DNA from: Oopsacas minuta | Lineage: Eukaryota; Animalia; Porifera | Assembly (NCBI GenBank): GCA_024704765.1 | Contig: JAKMXF010000336.1 | Location: forward strand, 124,001 to 188,000 | Length of the DNA: 64,000 nucleotides | Reading direction: 5' to 3' | In this document: positions 53,001 through 64,000 of the stretch, piece by piece | Position numbering within the stretch: the stretch's first letter is position 1 | Layout: each line of letters begins with the position of its first letter | Position numbers and translations under genes: made by a program | The notes under the pieces: model-generated | What the model was told of the DNA's origin: nothing | Seen by the model: the letters and a program-made list of their open reading frames with translations, nothing else | Database searches by the model: none

Positions 53001-54854
53001 TTGTCGGTTCCCTACGTCAGTGTTTCACAACTTGTGGTCCACAGCTTGTGATCTAATTCCACATGACCATGATATACAGTGTAGTTACAGGCCCAATAAA
53101 GGTCAGAAACTGGCTTTTGGTCAATTGTAATATACGAGATGTCTTGCCTTTATTTATTGTTATATTTCACTATAGATGATAAGGAAGAATTTGGTCAAAA
53201 AGTGTGTCGAACTATTCCAGACTATTTCAGAGAATGCAGAGGACTACAAGAAGTTCTACGAACAATTCAGTAAGAATTTGAAACTTGGCATACACGAGGA
53301 TAGTCAGAACAGGAAGAAGATAGCTGATCTCTTGAGATATCACAGCTCATCATCTGGTGAGGATATGACTTCATTCAAGGATTATGTGTCTAGGATGAAG
53401 GTTAGTCTGTTTTCTTGAATTCAATTGTATATTACTCTGGAATATTTCCGATTTTGTGTTGATTTTGGTGTGAGAAATTCTTTATACTAATGATAATTTC
53501 TATAAATCTATTTCTCTATATGTATTCTGGAACTGTATTCAATTCTCTTCAATAATATAGGACAATCAGAAACATATATACTACATTACAGGCGAATCAC
53601 TTGAGCATGTACGAAACATAGCCTTTGTAGAACGCGTGAAAAAGCGCGGATATGAAGTACTATACATGATAGAGCCTATTGATGAATACGCCGTACAGCA
53701 ATTGAAAGATTACGAAGGGAAGACCCTAACCTCCGTCACAAAGGAAGGCCTCGAACTCCCTGAGGACGAAGACGAGAAGAAAAAACTCGAGGAAGACAAA
53801 GCTAATTACGAAGAGCTCTGTAAGGCAATGAAAGACGTGCTAGACAAGAAAGTTGAGAAAGTGCTTGTATCAAATCGTCTCGTAGATTCTCCCTGTTGTA
53901 TTGTAACAGCTCAACACGGATGGACTGCGAATATGGAGCGTATAATGAAGGCTCAGGCACTGAGAGATACTTCTACTATGGGATATATGGCTGCTAAGAA
54001 ACATTTTGAAATCAATCCTGATCACCCAATTATTAAGCAGGTGAGTTACTATATTCAATTCATATTCTCGCGTGAAAACCTACCTTATTGTGTTAGAAAT
54101 CTGTCCAGATTCTAACATGAAAATATTCGGGGAAGTCAGAAATTTCGTTACAGGGCATTCCCGCTAATCCATAGTAAATCCCACTCTAACTACTCGAGGA
54201 GTCTCCATGGACGTAGTCTTGGGGTCGCTCCCCCAAATACTCAAAATGAAATGTCGGTATCCGATTTACATTTTCTGAATTATTTGACTGATATGTCCAC
54301 TTCCCAGAGATTGATTAAGTATTATTTACAAGTAGTATTTACTTATTTCGTTCCATGAGCTTGTCTGTTGTAGAGGTGTTGTTCGCTTTTCGGAGTGTCC
54401 GTTTTTGGGAGACTCCTCTGTGGTCACTATATTTTCAAATTTCCCACTGGATAAACGTGAAATCCCGACATATTCCAGGGTTGCCGGTTGGCAAGTATGG
54501 AATTGGTCCATATCCATCCTCTACATGTAAATTGTTACCATAACCTATAATTGTATGACTTATATCTGATATTATATTATTCTACAGTTGAAAACAAAGA
54601 CAGACGAAGATAAGAACGACAAATCCGTTAAAGATTTAATCTTCCTTCTATACGAAACATCTTTAATGTCATCTGGATTTACACTAGAGGATCCTAGTAC
54701 ACACGCAAGACGTATCTACCATATGATAAAACTAGGCCTAGGTGTAGATGATGATGATGAACCTATTGGACAGACAGCTGGTGCCGCCGACGCTATGCCC
54801 ACTCTTGAAGGGGAAGAGAAGGCTGACGTGACTCGGATGGAGGATGTTGATTAG
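50025..54854 (+). CDS. HSP90: Cytosolic HSP90; exons 50025-50375, 51089-51382, 51873-52526, 53176-53400, 53561-54040, 54588-54854 (~756 aa)
   Basis: [56 protein letters not shown], charged linker, C-terminal MEDVD. Five GT-AG introns keep frame. Confidence 0.97.
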
Positions 54855-56776
54855 ATCTATTGACGTTATAGTTTAGATAGCTTGTTCTTCCTTATTCTTT
54901 AGTGATTCTATTTTGTAGTCTATAATTGTTCCCATTTGATTTTGTTATGGCGTTATTTGTTATCAAAAGTTTATATACACAGATGTCTCTAATTTTCTAC
55001 TCAAATCAGTGTTCTCTCTAACTTTCTGAGGGCAGGACTTATGACTAGGGTTTCGGGGGTACAACGACTATTCCGAGGGAATACTGACTGAGATTAGTGG
55101 GATTCTAACTGGGCCATGCGAGCAATGCCAAACGACAGAGATCTTGGAGCTAGCAAGGTTTTCCAAATATCGATATCGTTAAAAATATAGATTAAGATAA
55201 ATTTCGTAAAATAGTTTTTGCACCTTAAATATATCAGTGAATACTACATCAATGCTGATAGATTATATACACTGACTACAATGTTATACTTTCAAAAGAT
55301 AGCAAACGCAACGGAAACACAGTAACTGTATATTTCCTCATCTAGTCGCAAAGAATTTGACCTCGCTAATCCCAACAGAGTCTAATGGTTAGACAATCTT
55401 TGGAGGAGGTACATGAAATCTTACATAAGGCAGAATTCGATCCAATTCTAATTCGGGCAAAATATGTCCTCCTGGTTCCTGTAGTATTGCTGCAATGCAT
55501 TTCATTAAATGGCCACTTTCTCAAAAGCCTGTACCTCAAAGAAATTTGAATATTCCAACCCTAAGGTTGTTTGTTGACAATATACATTTGTAAGAAATTT
55601 CCAGTTTATCATAGCGATAATTCCGTCTTGTTTCGAAATTTTGCACAGAATTTCACATCGTACCAGAAACTATATAAATCCAACTATGTATTAGTTTCTG
55701 TGATAATTACCAAACTAGATACACCTAGAACTGGGATCGATACTCCTTGGGTAGCGATTCCCAAAATTTTTCACCCATGGACTCCCTATACCAATTTATA
55801 CCCATTATGTAGAGCCTAGACCCCTCCCATAGATTACAATACAAATTTTGAGGTCATGTGGACCCCTTGTTGTCGTTGGGATCATCAAGGGGTCTCGCTT
55901 TTATGGATATATGTCGAAGGTCAATGAGGCTAGTGTCACGCCAAAACTTCCAAAACCCTTAATTGCCCAGTTTTTTGTAGTCCAGTCTAATCCAAATATG
56001 CTACGTCCCGCGATGTCCCGAAAAATTTGTGTCATCCATCCAGTTTTTTTCTTCACTCAGATTGGCAAGTATGAATACACAGCTGTCTATAGATAATCAC
56101 TCATTATATTCTATATTTATGCTAAAATATTCTCACAAATAATGTCCTTTCTGAGAATTATTTTGGAAACGAAGACACTGAGAACATCTCAAGGGACATT
56201 GGGGGTAAGGATTTCTGCCTCATCCAATCATATGCTTACTGTTCTAACCCAATTAGTGTATAGAAATTGGTGGCTTCTAAATTCTTGAGTTGAATATATT
56301 CTTATATGGTATTATCAACGTGTTCATGTTTAGCTTCCCAGAGAAATCGAGATTTAAGAATATACATCATATTTACAGAAATATTCACGTCCCACAGGCG
56401 CCGAACCAGTGGAGGCTCGAATCCCCCCTCGATTAATTGCAGCCCCATAGAGCTAATACAAACAATATGTGTGAACCATCTGGATAGTGCGACTCTGATA
56501 AGTACAGATATGAGAAGAATTAATTTGTATAATTTGCAGAACATTGTGGCTAGATAAACACATCATGTGATGCTATTAGAAATACAATGAAATAGGATAT
56601 TGTATTGAATTATATCTCATCATTATATATGCAACAAGTTATGTGAATTGATAAAACTGAAGATGTAATGGTAATTGTATTACATTAATATTCAAAAAGA
56701 TTTTATCGATCTCAGTTCTTAATACATCTTTGCTGAAGTAAGAGGTAAATACTATTTGTAATTATTCGTATTCATT

Positions 56777-58753
56777 ATGAAGAAGACAGGCAATATGTGT
56801 CTGTTGTTAGTAGGTTTAGTGATATGTTTGTATTGTTATGTTGAGGTTGAGATGTCGGATTGTAATAATGGAGCAGGATATTGTGATTTTGGTAATTCCT
56901 CCCTCAGTTGCTACGTCACCAATAATGAAACTCAGGTTATCAAGAGTTTGTTAAGCAACTGTAGCGGTCAGAGTACAGCATTTGTTACAATATATATCTA
57001 CAAAGACTACGTATCAACAGTATACGGGAATCTAATCATTGATGTAGAATTAGCCTCAAATATCCAATATTTACTCATTTACAATTACGAAGATCAAGAT
57101 AATATCCGTTTAACTACATCTAGTCAAAATACTGGATTAACGAGGATATATGTTAGTAGTAGTTATAATATCCAGCTCGAGTCTAAAAACTTTTTCAATT
57201 ACTTCACAGGTCTAAATTCTATCTACATGGGTAATTGTATTACAATAGAAACACCATCTTTTACAAATCTACAATATCTAACTGATCTAAACATTAGAAT
57301 AGTAGGTTCGTCCACGCGTACATTTGATAACACAATCGTTAGAGGATTATCTAACCTGATTACACTAAGTTTCTCTAACTCGGATTTCAGTAGCATAACT
57401 AAAGGAGCATTGGATGGTTTGAACTCGTTAACACTTCTGAGCTTTGAAAACAATAAATTAAGTATTATTGAAGATGGTACATTCAGTGAACTATCAAGCC
57501 TGTTAAGACTCTATCTTCAAAATAATGGAATTAAGATTATATCAAATAATGTTTTCGAAGGTTTAACTGAACTGACAAGACTGAATTTAGATGAGAATCC
57601 AGGATTCCCTATTGAAGCATTGATACATGCAAGCTATCTTGAACAAATATACTTACAGTACAATGATTATCATACTCTAGACTCATATGTATTCCAGCAA
57701 TTGAAATCATTTACCGGCATATATATATATGTAAATGACCCGTTCATCTGCGACTGTAGATTACAATGGACGTCAATGGTATCGCAATATGGGGTATTTA
57801 TAAATAATGGATATTGTTCCGAACCAAGCATTTTCTTCCAAAAGTCTATTAATAATCCACTGTTGTATACCAATTGCTCACAAACAGAAGCTTATCAATG
57901 CTTTGACAAGTCCATAATCTGTCCCAGTAATGAAATATGCCATAATACACAAAATGGCTACCTTTGTAGTTGTCCAAGAGGATATTCACTGCATAATTCA
58001 GGAGAATGTAGAGACTTCGATGAATGTAATGAGGCAACTACCTGCGAGCATACCTGTGTCAACACAGACGGTTCATACCATTGTGGATGTGATGAAGGAT
58101 ACAAGATAGCTACTAATGGATATGACTGTGAAGATGTTAATGAGTGTCAGGAATTGAATGGAGGATGTGAATTTGGTTGTAGAAATTCTATAGGTTCATA
58201 TCAGTGTTTTTGTGAGTATGGACACAAACTGTATAACGAAACTCAATGTGAGGAAAGTATAGAGTGTGAATTAATGGGAGATGATTGCATTAATCCTATA
58301 GAGAGTAGTTATAATTGCAAAGGAGGGTTCAATCTATCGATCTTTAACCTTTCTTGTCCTAATGTGAATTCTCAAGGGAACACTTCATCAATGCAAACTT
58401 GTCCACAAACTGATTCAGGATTGATTATACTTCCAATAGTTGTTGTTGGTACTTCTTTCGTTTTCAACATTTTTACAACAATTGTAATAATCACACTATT
58501 AATTATAATAATCTACATCGTCAGGAAGTCAAAGAATAAGACAAGTAATCCATCTGACAAGGACACAGAAACACAGATAAAACAAAAGTCTTTCAAGAAT
58601 GAATCGATCAATAGTTCTATTGATGAACTACCACAAGCAGATAACTCTAAAACTACAGCAGCATTTGAATCAAGTCCAATGCTAGGGGAATATCAAAATC
58701 TAGCAAAACCACAGAGCTATCCTGCTAAATTACAAGATGAAACTTCAGATTAG
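56777..58753 (+). CDS. Type I membrane receptor: signal peptide, LRRs, LRRCT, EGF/cbEGF repeats, TM, cytoplasmic tail; paralog 1, intronless
   Basis: Hydrophobic N-terminus; LxxLxLxxN repeats; DPFICDCRLQW; DFDEC/DVNEC EGF domains; TM at IILPIVVVG...IIIYIV followed by RKSK. Confidence 0.9.
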   Translation: MKKTGNMCLLLVGLVICLYCYVEVEMSDCNNGAGYCDFGNSSLSCYVTNNETQVIKSLLSNCSGQSTAFVTIYIYKDYVSTVYGNLIIDVELASNIQYLLIYNYEDQDNIRLTTSSQNTGLTRIYVSSSYNIQLESKNFFNYFTGLNSIYMGNCITIETPSFTNLQYLTDLNIRIVGSSTRTFDNTIVRGLSNLITLSFSNSDFSSITKGALDGLNSLTLLSFENNKLSIIEDGTFSELSSLLRLYLQNNGIKIISNNVFEGLTELTRLNLDENPGFPIEALIHASYLEQIYLQYNDYHTLDSYVFQQLKSFTGIYIYVNDPFICDCRLQWTSMVSQYGVFINNGYCSEPSIFFQKSINNPLLYTNCSQTEAYQCFDKSIICPSNEICHNTQNGYLCSCPRGYSLHNSGECRDFDECNEATTCEHTCVNTDGSYHCGCDEGYKIATNGYDCEDVNECQELNGGCEFGCRNSIGSYQCFCEYGHKLYNETQCEESIECELMGDDCINPIESSYNCKGGFNLSIFNLSCPNVNSQGNTSSMQTCPQTDSGLIILPIVVVGTSFVFNIFTTIVIITLLIIIIYIVRKSKNKTSNPSDKDTETQIKQKSFKNESINSSIDELPQADNSKTTAAFESSPMLGEYQNLAKPQSYPAKLQDETSD

Positions 58754-60423
58754 TCTTACTTTGTAATATACCCAAGTTTCTCAAAGCTTTTACGGACATT
58801 AGTTTAGTAACCAGGACTAAACTATAGGTTTGTCCTCATAGTGTGATTACATATGTCTCCACAGTATTGTATATTTGCTAGGTTTACTCTTGGATTTGAG
58901 TTCTTAGATTTAATTCCTGAATTAGCCAGGAAGTATTGTGAGTGATTTATCATTAATTGTGTATAATTGCCTCGGGATTAATGGACTAACAATACTAATA
59001 GGCAGAAACTAATAATTCCAATGTTAATAGTATTTAGTGCCAGTGATGACAAAGGATTTATTGAAGTCAGTATTCCTTCTAACTTTCGGGGCAGTACTTT
59101 AATGGTGGTGTCAATAATCTGATAGGTACTGGCAATATTGTGATGAATTCGGACAAATATCCTGGGATCGAACAGATTTAAGCAAAATTCCGAGGGAACT
59201 CTGATTGAGATTGGAAGGATTTTAACCGGGGTATGAGAGCAGTGGCAAACTGCCAGCGATTATGAAGCTTGCAAGGTTTGGCAAATATCGTCTTGTTTTT
59301 CAAATTTACGCAGAATTACATCCAACTACGCTGTATTAGTTTCTGTGATAATTATCAAACTAGATACACCTAGAACTGGGTTTCGATACTCCTTGGGTAG
59401 CTGTTCCCAACTTTTTTCACTCATGACTACCGTATACCAATTTAGACTATTTATGTAGAGTCTAGATCCTCTCCCATAGATTACAATACAAATTTTGAGA
59501 TCCTGTGGACCCCTGCTGTCGTTTGGAACATCAAGGGGTCTCGCTTTTATGGATATATGTCGAGGGTCAATGAGGCTAATGTCACGCCAAAACTTCCAAA
59601 ACCCTTAATTGCCCAGATTTTTGTAGTCCAGTCTAATCCAAATATGCTACGTCCCGCGATGTCCCGCAAAATTTGTGTCATCCATCCAGTTTTTTTCTTC
59701 ACTCAGATTGGCAAGTATGAATACACAGCTGTCTATAGATAATCACTCATTATATTCTATATTTATGCTAAAATATTCTCACAAATAATGTCCTTTCTGA
59801 GAATTATTTTGGAAACGAAGACACTGAGAACATCTCAAGGGACATTGGGGGTAAGGATTTCTGCCTCATCCAATCATATGCTTACTGTTCTAACCCAATT
59901 AGTGTATAGAAATTGGTGGCTTCTAAATTCTTGAGTTGAATACATTCTTTATATGGTATTATTACTGTGCTCATGTTTAGCTTCCCAGAGAAATAGATAT
60001 TTAAGAATATCCATCATATTTACAGAAATATTCACGTCCCACAGGCGCCGAACCAGTGGGGGCTCGAATCCTCCCTCGATTAATTGCAGCCCCATAGAGC
60101 TAATACAAAGAATATGTGTGAGCCATCTGGATAGTGCAACCCTGATAAGTACCGGTATGAGATGAATTAATTTGTATAATTTGCAGAACATTGTGGCTAG
60201 ATAAACACATCATGTGATGCTATTAGAAATGCAATGAAATAGGATATTGTATTGAATAATATCTCATCATTATATATGCAGCAAGCTATGTGAATTGATA
60301 AAACTGAAGAAGTAATGGTAATTGTATTACATGAATATTCAAAAAGAATTTATCGATCTCATTTCTTAGTACATCTTTGCTGAAGAAAGAGGTAAATACC
60401 ATCCGTAATTATTCGTATTCATT

Positions 60424-62451
60424 ATGAAGAAGACAGGCAATATATGTCTGTTGTTGGGTTTAGTGATATGTTTGTATTGTTATGTTGAGGTTGAGATGTC
60501 GGATTGTAATAATGGAGCAGGATATTGTGATTTTTATAGTAGCTATCTCAGGTGTTACATATCCAATAATGAAACGCAGTTTGTCAAGAGTTTGTTAAGC
60601 TACTGTAGCGGTCAGAGCACAGCATTTGTTTCAATATATGTGTACAAAAACTACGTATCAACAGCATACGGGAATCTAATTATTGATATAGAATTAGCCT
60701 CAAATATCCAATATTTACGCATTTACAATTACGAAGATCAAGATAATATTCGTTTAACTACATCTAGTCAAAATACTGGATTAACGAGGATAGGTGTTAG
60801 TAGTAGCTATCACATCCAGCTCGAGTCTGGTAACTTTTTCAATTACTTCACAAGTCTAAAATCTATCTCCATGGGTTATTGTATTACAATAGAAACACCA
60901 TCTTTCACAAATCTACAATATCTAACTTATCTCTACGTTAGAATAGGTTCGTCCACGCGTACATTTGATAACACAATCGTTAGAGGATTATCAAACTTAA
61001 TTTATCTAAGGTTCCCTAACTCGGGTATCAGTAGCATAACTAAAGGAGCATTTGATGGCTTGAACTCGTTAACATATCTGAGCTTTGAAGACAATAAATT
61101 AAGTATTATTGAGGATGGTACATTTAGTGAACTCTCAAGTCTGGAAAGACTCTATCTTCAAAATAATGGAATAAAGATTATATCAAATATTGTTTTCGAA
61201 GGTTTAACTGAACTGACAGAACTGAGATTAGATGAGAATCCAGGATTTCCTATTGAAGCATTGATACATACAAGATCTCTAAGGTCTCTTGAATATGTAA
61301 ACTTACAGTACAATGATTATCATACTCTAGACCCATATGTATTCCAGCAATTGAAATTACTAAGCCGCATATATTTAAACAACCCGTTCATCTGCGACTG
61401 TAGATTACAATGGACGTCAATTGTATCGCAATATGGGATAAATATATATAATGGATTATGTTCTGAACCAAACAATTTCCTCCTAAAGTATATTACTAAT
61501 CCACAGTTGTATACAAATTGCTCACAAACAGAATCTTATCAATGCTTTGACAAGTCTATAACCTGTCCAAGTAATCAAGTATGTCATAATACACAAGATG
61601 GTTACCTTTGTAGTTGTCCAAGAGGATATTCACTGCATAATTCAGGAGAATGTAGAGACTTCGATGAATGTGATGAGGAAACTGAATGCGAGCATACCTG
61701 TGTCAACACCGAAGGTTCATACCATTGTGGATGTGAAGAAGGATACAAGCTAGCTACTAATGGATATGACTGTGAAGATGTTAATGAGTGTCAGGAATTG
61801 AATGGAGGATGTCAGTTTGGTTGTAGAAATTCCATAGGTTCATATCAGTGTTTTTGTGAGTATGGACACAAACTGTATAACGAAACTCAATGTGCGGAAA
61901 GTATAGAGTGTGAATTAATGGGAGATGATTGCATTAATCCTATAGAGAGTGGTTATATTTGCAAAGGAGGGTTCAATCTATCGATCTTTAACCTTTCTTG
62001 CCCGAACGTGAATTCGCAAGAGAACATTCCACAAAATAACACAATACACCAATCTTGCGAATCAGCAACTACATTTAGACCAGTACAAACACCTACACAG
62101 ACCAAATGGGAATTTCTACCATTAGCTGTTGTTGGTATTTCTTTCGTTTTCAACATTTTTACAACAATTGTAATAATCACACTATTAATTATAATAATTT
62201 ACATCGTCAGGAAGTCAAAGAATAAGACAAGTAATCCATCTGACAAGGACACAAAAACACAAATGAAACTAAAGTATTTCAACAATGAATCGATCTATAA
62301 TTCTATTGATGAACAACCACAAGCAGATAACTCGAGAAACACAGCAGCATTTGAAGCAAGTCCAATGCTAGGGAAATATCAAAATCTTGCAGTACCTCAG
62401 AGTTATCCTGCTAAATTACAAGATGAAACTGCAGACTATCAGACTTTGTAA
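60424..62451 (+). CDS. LRR-EGF-TM receptor, paralog 2, intronless
   Basis: Same architecture; tail contains SIYNSI, KYQNL, DYQTL. Confidence 0.9.
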   Translation: MKKTGNICLLLGLVICLYCYVEVEMSDCNNGAGYCDFYSSYLRCYISNNETQFVKSLLSYCSGQSTAFVSIYVYKNYVSTAYGNLIIDIELASNIQYLRIYNYEDQDNIRLTTSSQNTGLTRIGVSSSYHIQLESGNFFNYFTSLKSISMGYCITIETPSFTNLQYLTYLYVRIGSSTRTFDNTIVRGLSNLIYLRFPNSGISSITKGAFDGLNSLTYLSFEDNKLSIIEDGTFSELSSLERLYLQNNGIKIISNIVFEGLTELTELRLDENPGFPIEALIHTRSLRSLEYVNLQYNDYHTLDPYVFQQLKLLSRIYLNNPFICDCRLQWTSIVSQYGINIYNGLCSEPNNFLLKYITNPQLYTNCSQTESYQCFDKSITCPSNQVCHNTQDGYLCSCPRGYSLHNSGECRDFDECDEETECEHTCVNTEGSYHCGCEEGYKLATNGYDCEDVNECQELNGGCQFGCRNSIGSYQCFCEYGHKLYNETQCAESIECELMGDDCINPIESGYICKGGFNLSIFNLSCPNVNSQENIPQNNTIHQSCESATTFRPVQTPTQTKWEFLPLAVVGISFVFNIFTTIVIITLLIIIIYIVRKSKNKTSNPSDKDTKTQMKLKYFNNESIYNSIDEQPQADNSRNTAAFEASPMLGKYQNLAVPQSYPAKLQDETADYQTL

Positions 62452-64000
62452 TACCGCCAAGTTTCTCAAAGCTTTTACTGACATTAGTTTATTGAACAGG
62501 ACTAAACTATAGGTTTGTCCTCATAGTGTGATTACATAGGTCTCCACAGTATTGTATATTTGCTAGGTTTACTCTTGGATTTGAGTTCTTATATTTAATT
62601 CCTGAATTAGCCAGGCAGTATTGTGAGTGATTTATCATTAATTGTGTATAATTGCCTCGGGATTAATGTAATAACAATACTAATAGGTAGAAACTAATAA
62701 TTCCAATGTTAATAGTATTTAGTGCCAGTGATGACAAAAGATTTATTGAAATCAGTGTTCCTTCTAACTTTCGGGGCAGTACTTTAATGGTGTTGTCAAT
62801 AATCTGGTAGGTACTGACAATATTGTGATGAACTCGGACAAATATCCTGGGATCGAACAGATTTATGCAAAATTTCGAGGGAACTCTGACTGAGATTGGA
62901 AGGATTTTACCCGGAGTATGAGAGCAGTGGCAAACCGCCAGCGATTATGAAACCAGCAAGGTTTGGCAAATATCGTCTTGTTTTTCAAATTTACGCAGAA
63001 TTACATCCAACTACGCTGTATTAGTTTCTGTGATAATTATCAAACTAGATACACCCAAAACTGGGTTTCGATACTCCTTGGGTAGCGGTTCCCAACTTTT
63101 TTCACCCATAGACTCCCGTATACCAATTTAAACTCATTATGTAGAGTCTAGACCCTCTCCCATAGATTACAATACAAATTTTGAGATCCTGTGGATCCTT
63201 GCTGTCGTTTGGATCATCAAGGGGTCTCGCTTTTATGGATATATGTCGAGGATCAATGAGGCTAATGTCACGCCAAAACTTCCAAAACCCTTAATTGCCC
63301 AGTTTTCTGTAGTCCAGTCTAATCGAAATATGCTACGTCCCGCCATGTCCCGCAAAATTTGTGTCATCCATCCAGTTTTTTTCTTCACTCAGGTTGGCAA
63401 GTATGAATACACAGCTGTCTATAGATGATCACTCATTAAATTCCATATTTATACTAAAATATTCTCACAAATAATTCCTTTCTGAGAATTATTTTGGAAA
63501 CGAAGACACTGAGAACATCTCAAGGGACATTGGGGGTAAGGATTTCTGCCTCATCCAATCATATGCTTACTGTTCTAACCCAATTAGTGTATAGAAATTG
63601 GTGGCTTCTAAATTCTTGAGTTGAATACATTCTTTATATGGTATTATTACTGTGCTCATGTTTAGCTTCCCAGAGAAATAGATATTTAAGAATATCCATC
63701 ATATTTACAGAAATATTCACGTCCCACAGGCGCCGAACCAGTGGGGGCTCGAATCCCCCCTCGATTAATTGCAGCCCCATAGAGCTAATACAAAGAATAT
63801 GTGTGAGCCATCTGGATAGTGCAACCCTGATAAGTACCGGTATGAGATGAATTAATTTGTATAATTTGCAGAACATTGTGGCTAGATAAACACATCATGT
63901 GACGCTATTAGAAATACAATGAAATAGGATATTGTATTGAATAATATCTCATCATTATATATGCAGCAAGCTATGTAAATTGAAGAAACTGAAGAAGTAA

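What the first reader, a model, noticed from the sequence alone, without database searches (positions are those of the whole stretch)
56777..62451. Tandem LRR-EGF receptors diversified on the concave LRR face
The two paralogs have nearly identical EGF domains, TM and convex LRR segments (EDQDNIRLTTSSQNT, KLSIIEDGTFSEL, GFPIEALIH) but differ in the exposed x positions of almost every LxxLxLxxN strand: YLLIY/YLRIY, RIYV/RIGV, NSIYMGN/KSISMGY, TDLNI/TYLYV, ITLSFS/IYLRFP, TLLSFEN/TYLSFED, LRLYL/ERLYL, TRLNL/TELRL, EQIYL/EYVNL. This pattern is known from VLR, TLR and plant RLK/RLP ligand-binding surfaces. An intronless LRR+cbEGF+TM array without TIR or kinase, continuing past the window, is a candidate undescribed innate or allorecognition receptor family.
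Basis: partly seen in the sequence, partly recalled or inferred. Interest (0 to 1): 0.75.

Follow-up and report, generated by a model that had tools for sequence, protein, structure and literature searches.

The report
Diversifying LRR-EGF surface receptors, glass sponge
Two neighbouring single-exon genes of the glass sponge Oopsacas minuta belong to an undescribed family of membrane receptors whose predicted ligand-binding face changes amino acids faster than silent sites, the signature of fast-evolving recognition receptors; what they bind is unknown.

Summary
Window 56777-58753 (A, 658 aa) and 60424-62451 (B, 675 aa) are intact single-ORF paralogs, 83% identical. Each has a signal peptide, LRRNT, about 11 LRRs, LRRCT, one EGF, two cbEGFs, a stalk, a TM helix and a 72-89 aa tail. 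They are units of a 3.65-kb tandem array. A third copy lies just past the window and a fourth is badly assembled.

A and B differ at 19 of 50 canonical concave positions against 18 of 192 other LRR positions (p=5e-6). Across 11 close paralogs, omega is 3.0 on the concave class and 0.5 elsewhere (LRT against omega=1, p about 7e-6). For A/B/C alone omega is 3.5 (p about 0.015). Tree-free pairwise estimates are weaker (1.7, or 1.4 with the class's own dS).

A syntenic array in another, unnamed assembly shows the same pattern. Paralogs also exchange LRR segments. The tail carries a conserved C-terminal Tyr-x-Asn-Leu/Met motif, and there is no TIR or kinase.

The genome is Oopsacas minuta. The databases call these proteins "fibrillin-like" or hypothetical, and no paper I found describes them. 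The only relatives are in unnamed ENA assemblies. The ligand and biological role are untested.

The scan has already reported other members of this family elsewhere in this genome.

The parts
55675..59321 (+). Tandem unit 1 of the array (period 3647 bp to unit 2); contains gene A
   Evidence: blastn of the units: 55675-58386 matches 63002-65708 at 91%, and 58430-60423 matches 62116-64108 at 95%. Identity profile.
55900..56075 (.). About 170-bp dispersed repeat element at the 5' edge of each unit
   Evidence: At least 35 copies across the genome at 77-87% identity.
56078..56776 (+). Array-specific upstream non-coding region (putative promoter/5'UTR), 93-100% identical between units and so more alike than the LRR-coding DNA
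   Evidence: only units A, B and C at 95-96%; copy D at 72-76%. No tRNA or Rfam family. The 80-aa antisense ORFs lie here and have no support as genes.
56777..58753 (+). Gene A, single ORF, 658 aa, LRR-EGF-TM receptor
   Evidence: An identical 658-aa protein is already in public collections.
56777..56980 (+). A: signal peptide (res 1-26) and Cys-capped LRRNT (res 27-68)
   Evidence: Model helix 5-25 and hairpin 34-47. Conserved Cys residues.
56981..57736 (+). A: LRR solenoid (res 69-320). Ten scored repeats start at res 69, 96, 121, 146, 168, 194, 218, 242, 266 and 288, with an eleventh at 312. The hypervariable concave positions lie here.
57737..57892 (+). A: LRRCT cap (res 321-372), with a variable stretch at res 341-346
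57893..58267 (+). A: one EGF and two calcium-binding EGF domains (res 373-497)
   Evidence: Pfam EGF_CA, cEGF and FXa_inhibition. Model pLDDT 84-91 up to about res 480, lower beyond.
58268..58534 (+). A: low-confidence Cys-containing stalk (res 498-552) and TM helix (res 553-586)
58535..58753 (+). A: cytoplasmic tail (res 587-658) with YQNL and a YP motif. The family's terminal Tyr motif (YQTL in B and C) is lost through a TAG stop and a 1-bp difference.
59322..63001 (+). Tandem unit 2 (period 3685 bp to unit 3); contains gene B
60424..62451 (+). Gene B, single ORF, 675 aa. LRR region about 60625-61380, TM about 62119-62211, tail ends in YQTL. The database model starts at Met25 and lacks the signal peptide.
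63002..64000 (+). Start of tandem unit 3: upstream region of gene C, whose ORF starts 109 bp past the window end (C336:188109-190131, 673 aa)

Best explanation
A and B are recently duplicated members of a glass-sponge family of type-I membrane recognition receptors.

Shown: a capped 11-repeat LRR solenoid sits on a short stalk of one EGF and two calcium-binding EGFs, followed by a single TM helix and a disordered tail. Within the solenoid, the framework, EGFs and TM evolve under purifying selection (omega about 0.35-0.5). The outward-pointing residues of the concave beta-sheet evolve with omega above 1 and are rich in Tyr and Arg. New variants arise by point substitution and also by exchange of LRR segments between paralogs, including genes about 76 kb away and on another scaffold.

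Inferred: the concave face, together with the variable parts of LRRNT and LRRCT, is the ligand-binding site and is under diversifying selection from variable targets. These could be microbes or food particles, or non-self sponge tissue. The signal or uptake step goes through the conserved tail motifs, a YP(G/A) element and a C-terminal Tyr-x-Asn-Leu/Met. That terminal motif fits both an SH2 (Grb2-type pYxN) docking site and a YxxPhi endocytic sorting signal.
For: Architecture; AF2 model with the LRR domain above pLDDT 90 and strands at motif positions 3-5; best structural neighbours are LRRTM2, Nogo receptor, FLRT2/3 and NGL ectodomains.

Concentration of differences: Fisher p=5e-6 for A/B. 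Diversity by motif position alternates as a strand should: p1 0.07, p3 0.64, p4 0.09, p5 0.63, p7 0.47.

Selection: NG86 for A/B gives concave dN 0.24-0.27, against gene-wide dS 0.155 and LRR-rest dN 0.05. ML over 11 paralogs gives omega 3.02 against 0.50; lnL is -1123.0 against -1133.1 with omega fixed at 1. A/B/C alone give omega 3.5 with 2dlnL=5.9. Five independent pairs give 1.72, CI 1.23-2.41.

Replication: in a syntenic array of another assembly, concave positions differ at 50-58% against 16-18% elsewhere, and dN is 0.38-0.49 against dS of about 0.3.

Composition: Tyr is 21.5% of concave residues against 5.8% elsewhere, and Arg 9.3% against 2.0%.

Segmental exchange: four tracts with p<=0.0005, including B-C res 27-73 and C with the gene at C336:264 kb res 84-116. 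B and C are identical in signal peptide and LRRNT and have dS of about 0 from the stalk to the TM (0.03 in the EGFs), but dS is 0.14-0.17 in the LRRs.

Tail: Y-x-N-[LMIV] lies in the last 35 residues of 39 of 81 family tails, against 2.2 in shuffles. At least 60 SH2 matches occur in the genome.
Against: There are no expression, binding or polymorphism data.

Omega above 1 depends on the estimator. The tree-based LRT assumes one tree although recombination is demonstrable. The tree-free estimate that uses only the class's own silent sites does not exclude 1 (1.42, CI 0.92-2.38). The A/B pair alone is marginal.

Solvent exposure was inferred from the LRR motif and the model's strand positions, not computed from coordinates.

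The tail-motif count is inflated by relatedness of the sequences, and gene A has itself lost the terminal motif.

The upstream non-coding DNA (4-5% divergence) is less diverged than coding silent sites (15%). Part of the LRR divergence was therefore probably imported by conversion rather than arising in place.
Confidence: 0.7

Rival explanations
1. The proteins are endogenous cell-adhesion or matrix receptors, like FLRT, LRRTM, NGL or vasorin. The paralogs would have been sub- or neo-functionalised for different internal partners, for example in building or fusing the syncytial tissue. The concave-face changes would then reflect partner switching, not an arms race.
For: The closest folds are neuronal adhesion ectodomains: LRRTM2, FLRT2/3, NGL and Nogo receptor. 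cbEGF stalks are typical of matrix and adhesion proteins. Family members carry stalks of very different EGF number on the same type of LRR head.
Against: Omega above 1 recurs on the same face in many recent duplicates and in a second species. Segmental shuffling occurs among paralogs. At least 40 loci carry the family in a genome of 16,413 genes. All of this is more typical of recognition repertoires facing variable targets than of fixed ligand-receptor pairs.
Confidence: 0.15
2. The proteins act in gamete or larval recognition and evolve fast under sexual selection or conflict.
For: Only the general fact that reproductive surface proteins also show omega above 1 on binding faces. Nothing specific was found here.
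Against: The family is large and arranged in tandem arrays. The arrays are conserved in synteny between species. No ZP or other reproductive domain is present.
Confidence: 0.04
3. There is no adaptive diversification. The pattern would come from relaxed constraint on exposed residues in redundant or decaying duplicates, or from an assembly artefact such as haplotypes laid out as tandem copies.
For: Gene A has lost the terminal Tyr motif. The fourth copy is broken. The tree-free omega with the class's own dS has a CI that reaches 0.92.
Against: A, B and C are intact ORFs with omega of 0.35-0.6 outside the concave class. The ML LRT rejects omega=1. Two independent long-read-style assemblies carry similar arrays of four genes. 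The fourth copy's break coincides with a sequencing-adapter sequence and an N gap, which points to assembly rather than decay.
Confidence: 0.06

Closest known systems
Animal extracellular LRR (eLRR) receptors with LRRNT/LRRCT caps: LRRTM2, FLRT2/3, Nogo receptor, NGL, LGR4, LRRC15
   Same: LRR_8-type repeats with Cys-rich N- and C-caps. These give the best sequence matches among solved structures (E 1e-27 to 1e-13) and the best fold matches (TM by target 0.7). They are type-I membrane proteins or membrane-anchored.
   Different: None of them combines the LRR domain with cbEGFs and this tail. Identity is only 16-24%. The N-terminal half of the sponge domain (irregular 25-27-residue repeats with conserved motifs such as IRLTTSSQNTGL) matches about 70 representative clusters as a whole module in 1.84 billion; the other hits of the 112 at E<=0.001 are generic LRR stretches.
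Vasorin (SLIT-like 2) and Slit
   Same: They combine capped LRR domains with EGF domains. Vasorin is also a type-I membrane protein. This comparison rests on established knowledge, not on a test here.
   Different: Vasorin has an FN3 domain and Slit is secreted with four LRR blocks, LamG and CTCK. None of these domains is found here. Neither appeared among the sequence relatives, and neither family is known for concave-face diversification in tandem arrays.
[quoted passage not shown]
   Same: An LRR ectodomain on a TM protein without TIR, proposed to act as the sensing half of a split Toll-like receptor. The Amphimedon protein also carries EGF-like domains (review PMC6043800). O. minuta has TIR_2 loci, including a Death+TIR MyD88-like ORF.
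   Different: Orthology was not tested and no such protein turned up among the relatives. Ig domains are absent. No partner TIR membrane protein was identified. The conserved tail motifs point to phosphotyrosine or sorting rather than TIR signalling.
Diversifying LRR recognition repertoires: lamprey VLRs, expanded invertebrate TLRs, plant LRR-RLP/RLK and R genes
   Same: Variation is focused on the xxLxLxx concave strand with omega above 1. The genes lie in tandem arrays with birth-and-death evolution and segmental exchange. The binding face is Tyr-rich.
   Different: No somatic assembly is involved, since the genes are complete in the germline. There is no TIR or kinase, the repeat type is not the plant-specific one, and the stalk is made of cbEGFs. 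The resemblance is functional or evolutionary, not family membership.
Fibrillin / fibulin (the names given in public records)
   Same: Two cbEGF domains.
   Different: No TB or fibulin-type module is present. The protein has an LRR head and a TM helix. The name is an annotation artefact of the cbEGF matches.

Membership tests
Toll-like receptors | Cytoplasmic TIR domain after the TM helix | tested here: not met
   Pfam scan of A and B finds no TIR. The tail is 72-89 aa, is modelled as disordered and carries Tyr motifs only.
Toll-like receptors | Capped LRR ectodomain on a type-I membrane protein | tested here: met
Lamprey/hagfish variable lymphocyte receptors | Incomplete germline gene completed by somatic insertion of LRR cassettes, with a GPI/stalk anchor and no EGF | tested here: not met
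   Complete germline ORFs with EGF domains and a TM helix. Cassette-like exchange is seen only between germline paralogs.
Plant LRR-RLK/RLP | Plant-specific 24-residue LRR and, for RLKs, a cytoplasmic kinase | tested here: not met
   No kinase, and animal-type LRR_8 repeats with an LRRCT cap.
Animal eLRR superfamily (LRRNT-LRR-LRRCT ectodomains) | LRR_8-type repeats flanked by Cys-rich caps, extracellular | tested here: met
   Pfam LRR_8 at E 1e-18 to 5e-23. PDB sequence and fold matches. Conserved cap cysteines.
Vasorin / Slit | FN3 (vasorin), or multiple LRR blocks + LamG + CTCK (Slit) | tested here: not met
   None of these domains appears in the Pfam scan.
Fibrillin / fibulin | Long cbEGF arrays with TB (8-Cys) or fibulin C-terminal modules; secreted | tested here: not met
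   Only two cbEGFs and one EGF, no TB, and a TM helix is present.
Glass-sponge LRR-EGF receptor family (defined here and by earlier notes of this scan) | N-terminal module (LRRNT plus irregular repeats) + regular LRRs + LRRCT + EGF/cbEGF + TM + Tyr-motif tail, in a single exon | tested here: met
   A, B and C align end to end with at least 40 loci of the same genome and about 85 proteins of unnamed ENA assemblies.
Split Toll-like system (HyLRR/HyTRR type) | Functional pairing with a TIR-bearing membrane protein | not testable with these tools
   TIR_2 loci exist, four matches including one MyD88-like ORF, but pairing cannot be tested in silico.

The most novel reading that the evidence does not exclude
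Glass sponges lack the demosponge aggregation-factor system and canonical TLRs (from general knowledge, not tested here). They may instead use this germline-encoded LRR-EGF repertoire as their main self/non-self or microbe-recognition system. The repertoire would be diversified by positive selection and by cassette-like exchange of LRR strands between paralogs, and would be read out through phosphotyrosine or endocytic tail motifs. That would be an independent invention of an LRR-based variable recognition system in one of the earliest-branching animal lineages.
Probability: 0.25. Interest if true: 0.8.

Novelty: new variant of a known kind. Interest (0 to 1): 0.6.

Why it matters
Almost nothing is known about how glass sponges, which are syncytial, deep-branching animals, recognise microbes, food or foreign tissue. 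This family gives a concrete and testable candidate. It comprises at least 40 receptor genes with a defined, rapidly evolving binding face, a conserved cytoplasmic motif, and syntenic arrays in at least two other assemblies.

It also corrects public annotation ('fibrillin-like'). And it shows that LRR concave-face diversification with exchange between paralogs, known from VLRs, expanded TLRs and plant R genes, occurs in Porifera on a different receptor chassis.

Tried and rejected
- **TIR coupling.** PF01582 has no match in the genome. TIR_2 has four loci, one of them a Death+TIR MyD88-like ORF. That ORF is not linked to the array, so the split-TLR idea remains only a possibility.
- **RNA gene upstream.** A tRNA or other RNA gene might have explained the near-identical upstream DNA. 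ARAGORN and Rfam find nothing. The 80-aa antisense ORFs there are treated as by-products of the conserved DNA.
- **Transposon upstream.** Only the first 170 bp or so is a dispersed repeat; the rest is specific to the array.
- **Fourth copy as pseudogene.** Its N-terminal break coincides with a 19-base sequence that I recognise as the Nextera transposase adapter, followed by an N gap. This is at least partly an assembly artefact. A frameshift in its second EGF remains unexplained.
- **ESM Atlas.** It returned only generic LRR clusters and a weak ATRAID lead at 0.85, which I did not pursue.
- **Naming the two ENA assemblies.** The collection gives no names, so 'glass-sponge-restricted' is inferred from synteny and 76-86% identity of neighbouring genes.
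- **Not done.** Recombination-aware site models (no HyPhy or PAML installed).
Full report
**What is there.** The window is G000:C336:124001-188000 of a 61.46-Mb assembly in 365 contigs. That size, contig number and GC content match the published Oopsacas minuta genome (365 scaffolds, about 61 Mb, 36% GC; PMC10280926). Paralogs of the query carry NCBI/UniRef names from Oopsacas minuta. They are 83% identical. Pfam finds LRR_8/LRR_4, EGF_CA, cEGF and FXa_inhibition, with no TIR and no kinase.

**Structure.** I built an AlphaFold2 model of A on a 56-sequence family alignment. The mean pLDDT is 79, and it is above 90 for residues 30-370. The model shows a signal helix (5-25), an LRRNT hairpin, eleven parallel strands, an LRRCT, three EGF-like domains, a poorly modelled Cys-containing stalk, a TM helix (553-586) and a disordered tail. 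The nearest solved folds are LRRTM2, Nogo receptor, FLRT2/3 and NGL ectodomains. The nearest solved sequences are designed LRRs, LGR4, ALS, LRRC15 and VLRs. The public gene model of B starts at Met25 and lacks the signal peptide, but is otherwise collinear with the ORF, so the gene has a single exon.

**The array.**
- A and B are units of a direct tandem repeat that starts at 55675, with periods of 3647 and 3685 bp.
- Unit 3 begins at 63002. Its gene C (673 aa) starts 109 bp beyond the window.
- A fourth copy follows but is interrupted. Its ORF stops at residue 153, right at a 19-base sequence that I recognise as the Nextera transposase adapter, about 100 bp before a run of N. After the gap there is a frameshift in the second EGF. 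I treat this copy as badly assembled rather than as a shown pseudogene.
- Each unit begins with a dispersed repeat of about 170 bp (at least 35 genomic copies).
- About 700 bp of array-specific upstream DNA follow, 95-96% identical among A, B and C. That is more alike than the LRR-coding DNA, which is 79-94% identical in 150-bp windows. No tRNA or Rfam family lies there.

**Is the variation focused on the concave face?** Before counting, I defined the concave class as positions x2, x3, x5, x7 and x8 of ten LxxLxLxxN repeats, starting at A residues 69, 96, 121, 146, 168, 194, 218, 242, 266 and 288. The model's strands begin at motif position 3 in every repeat.
- A and B differ at 19 of 50 such positions against 18 of 192 other positions of the LRR region (Fisher p=4.9e-6). 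A/C and B/C behave alike.
- In eleven close paralogs from scaffolds C336 and C340, amino-acid diversity alternates along the motif as expected for a strand with one exposed side: p1 0.07, p2 0.31, p3 0.64, p4 0.09, p5 0.63, p6 0.27, p7 0.47.
- 22 of the 60 most variable sites fall in the class, against about 8 expected.
- Other variable patches lie in the LRRNT hairpin (res 38-48), the eleventh repeat and the LRRCT (res 341-346). From canonical LRR geometry these elements border the same sheet, but I could not check this on coordinates.
- Tyr makes up 21.5% of concave residues against 5.8% elsewhere, and Arg 9.3% against 2.0%.

**Is it selection?** The table summarises the estimates.

| Data and method | Omega, concave class | Omega, other sites | Test against omega=1 |
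|---|---|---|---|
| 11 paralogs, GY+F3X4 | 3.02 | 0.50 | lnL -1123.0 vs best -1133.1; 2dlnL about 20, p about 7e-6 |
| A, B, C only (no topology uncertainty) | 3.5 | 0.59 | 2dlnL=5.9, p about 0.015 |
| Five independent pairs, NG86, domain-wide dS | 1.72 (CI 1.23-2.41) | 0.47 (CI 0.36-0.61) | bootstrap P(<=1)=0.0008 |
| Same pairs, class's own silent sites | 1.42 (CI 0.92-2.38) | n/a | does not exclude 1 |

For A/B by Nei-Gojobori, concave dN is 0.24-0.27, the gene-wide dS is 0.155, LRR-rest dN is 0.05 (omega 0.35) and EGF omega is 0.38. The five-pair estimate was added because recombination is present, and pairwise counts do not depend on a tree. My conclusion is that purifying selection on the framework and a several-fold higher replacement rate on the concave face are certain. 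Omega above 1 is well supported but depends on the estimator.

**Mosaic evolution.**
- B and C are identical over the signal peptide and LRRNT (67 codons). Their dS is 0 from the stalk to the TM and 0.03 in the EGFs, but 0.14-0.17 in the LRRs.
- A GENECONV-style permutation test on variable sites finds four tracts that pass Bonferroni correction (p<=0.0005). These are B-C at res 27-73; C with the oppositely oriented gene at C336:264 kb at res 84-116, which is one LRR strand plus its flank; C with a gene on C340; and one more pair.
- LRR segments are therefore exchanged among paralogs.
- The upstream DNA has diverged by only 4-5%, against a coding dS of 0.15. This suggests that part of the LRR divergence was imported by conversion.

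**Family and distribution.**
- The genome holds at least 86 matching stretches in roughly 40-45 LRR-bearing loci, clustered on C336 and C340 and scattered elsewhere. Some carry much longer EGF stalks on the same type of LRR head.
- Outside O. minuta, about 85 full-length relatives at 34-57% identity come only from unnamed ENA assemblies.
- Two of these assemblies (ERZ25071281 and ERZ25072740) carry four-gene tandem arrays beside Fe-S-biosynthesis, CobW and F-box genes.
- O. minuta has the same neighbours, at 76-86% identity, beside its own LRR-EGF genes at C340:65-72 kb. That array is therefore ancestral and syntenic.
- In the first assembly, the three close paralogs show the same pattern independently: 50-58% differences at concave positions against 16-18% elsewhere, and dN of 0.38-0.49 against dS of about 0.3.
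- One neighbouring housekeeping gene has dS of about 1.0 between the two species. Pairwise dS averages about 0.17 in the window's clade. That clade therefore expanded, or was last homogenised, well after the species split.
- A profile of the unusual N-terminal module finds 112 representative clusters at E<=0.001 among 1.84 billion. About 70 are true whole-module matches. All 20 that I looked up are from O. minuta or from unnamed ENA assemblies.

**Tail.**
- 39 of 81 family tails carry Y-x-N-[LMIV] within the last 35 residues, usually 4-5 residues from the C-terminus, against 2.2 in shuffled tails. Relatedness inflates this contrast.
- Most others carry a Tyr variant at that place (YQTL, YETL, YEHM). 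A YP(G/A) element lies 12-15 residues upstream.
- The motif fits a Grb2-type SH2 site and a YxxPhi sorting signal. This reading comes from established motif knowledge and is an inference. SH2 domains are abundant in the genome.
- A has lost the terminal motif through a TAG stop and a 1-bp difference.

**Comparison with what is known.** The proteins belong to the broad animal eLRR class. They fail the defining tests for TLRs (no TIR), VLRs (complete germline genes with EGF and TM), plant RLK/RLPs, vasorin/Slit (no FN3, LamG or CTCK) and fibrillin (no TB domain; a TM helix is present). [quoted passage not shown] Orthology with these is untested, and no such protein surfaced in the searches. Neither glass-sponge genome paper mentions LRR proteins, and the literature searches found no description of this family.

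**Earlier notes of this scan.** Earlier notes describe other members of the same family in this genome, with the same reading. I took the species name from them as a lead and verified it myself. Two of the genes they covered are in my 11-paralog set.

**Verdict.** The finding is a new variant of a known kind of system: diversifying LRR recognition receptors on a new chassis. The ligand, expression and polymorphism remain unknown.

Noticed in passing
L031:7208-7226 (G000:C336:193207-193225), just before the N run at L031:7330-8100: A 19-base sequence that I recognise as the Nextera transposase (mosaic-end) adapter sits where the fourth array copy's ORF breaks off. Unrelated sequence and an assembly gap follow. 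The break is a scaffolding artefact, not evidence of a pseudogene.
   Followed up: partly
L031:8095-8340 (fourth array copy, second EGF): The reading frame shifts inside the second EGF domain of the fourth copy, after ...CDEGYML. This is either a real frameshift or a sequencing error next to the gap.
   Followed up: no
window 58735-58760: Gene A ends four codons early. The Tyr codon of the family's terminal YQTL motif reads TAG and there is a 1-bp difference, so A alone lacks the conserved C-terminal Tyr motif.
   Followed up: yes
window 60424-60496: The public gene model of B starts at Met25 and omits the signal peptide, which is conserved in all paralogs. The longer ORF from 60424 is the likely true start.
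   Followed up: yes
window 55900-56075, 59546-59720 and 63232-63400: A dispersed repeat of about 170 bp (at least 35 copies genome-wide at 77-87% identity) lies at the 5' edge of each tandem unit. It may be a SINE- or MITE-like element. Whether it played a role in the duplication is unknown.
   Followed up: partly
window 56124-56273: 150 bp of upstream non-coding DNA are 99-100% identical among units A, B and C, although coding silent sites differ by about 15%. This could reflect homogenisation or a constrained regulatory element. No Rfam or tRNA match was found.
   Followed up: partly
window 53636-54854: Exons of a cytosolic HSP90 gene ending in MEDVD (the usual ending is MEEVD) lie just upstream of the array.
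   Followed up: no
L038:436-1878 (G000:C343:322061-323503): A 480-aa ORF has a Death-like middle region and a C-terminal TIR_2 match (E 1.3e-9), which makes it a MyD88-like adaptor in O. minuta. The classical TIR model PF01582 finds nothing in the genome.
   Followed up: partly
G000:C340:56727-71602: This is the ancestral syntenic LRR-EGF array of O. minuta. F-box and Fe-S-biosynthesis neighbours (76-86% identical to those in ENA assembly ERZ25071281) sit beside three LRR-EGF genes. The fourth gene of the foreign arrays (X4/Z4) is a divergent subfamily, as shown by the alignment.
   Followed up: partly
G000:C336:204000-278000 (minus strand): Close relatives of A/B/C (71-78% identical LRR heads) carry much longer stalks made of repeated EGF modules, with ORFs up to 1395 aa. 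The family therefore varies in stalk length as well as in binding face.
   Followed up: no
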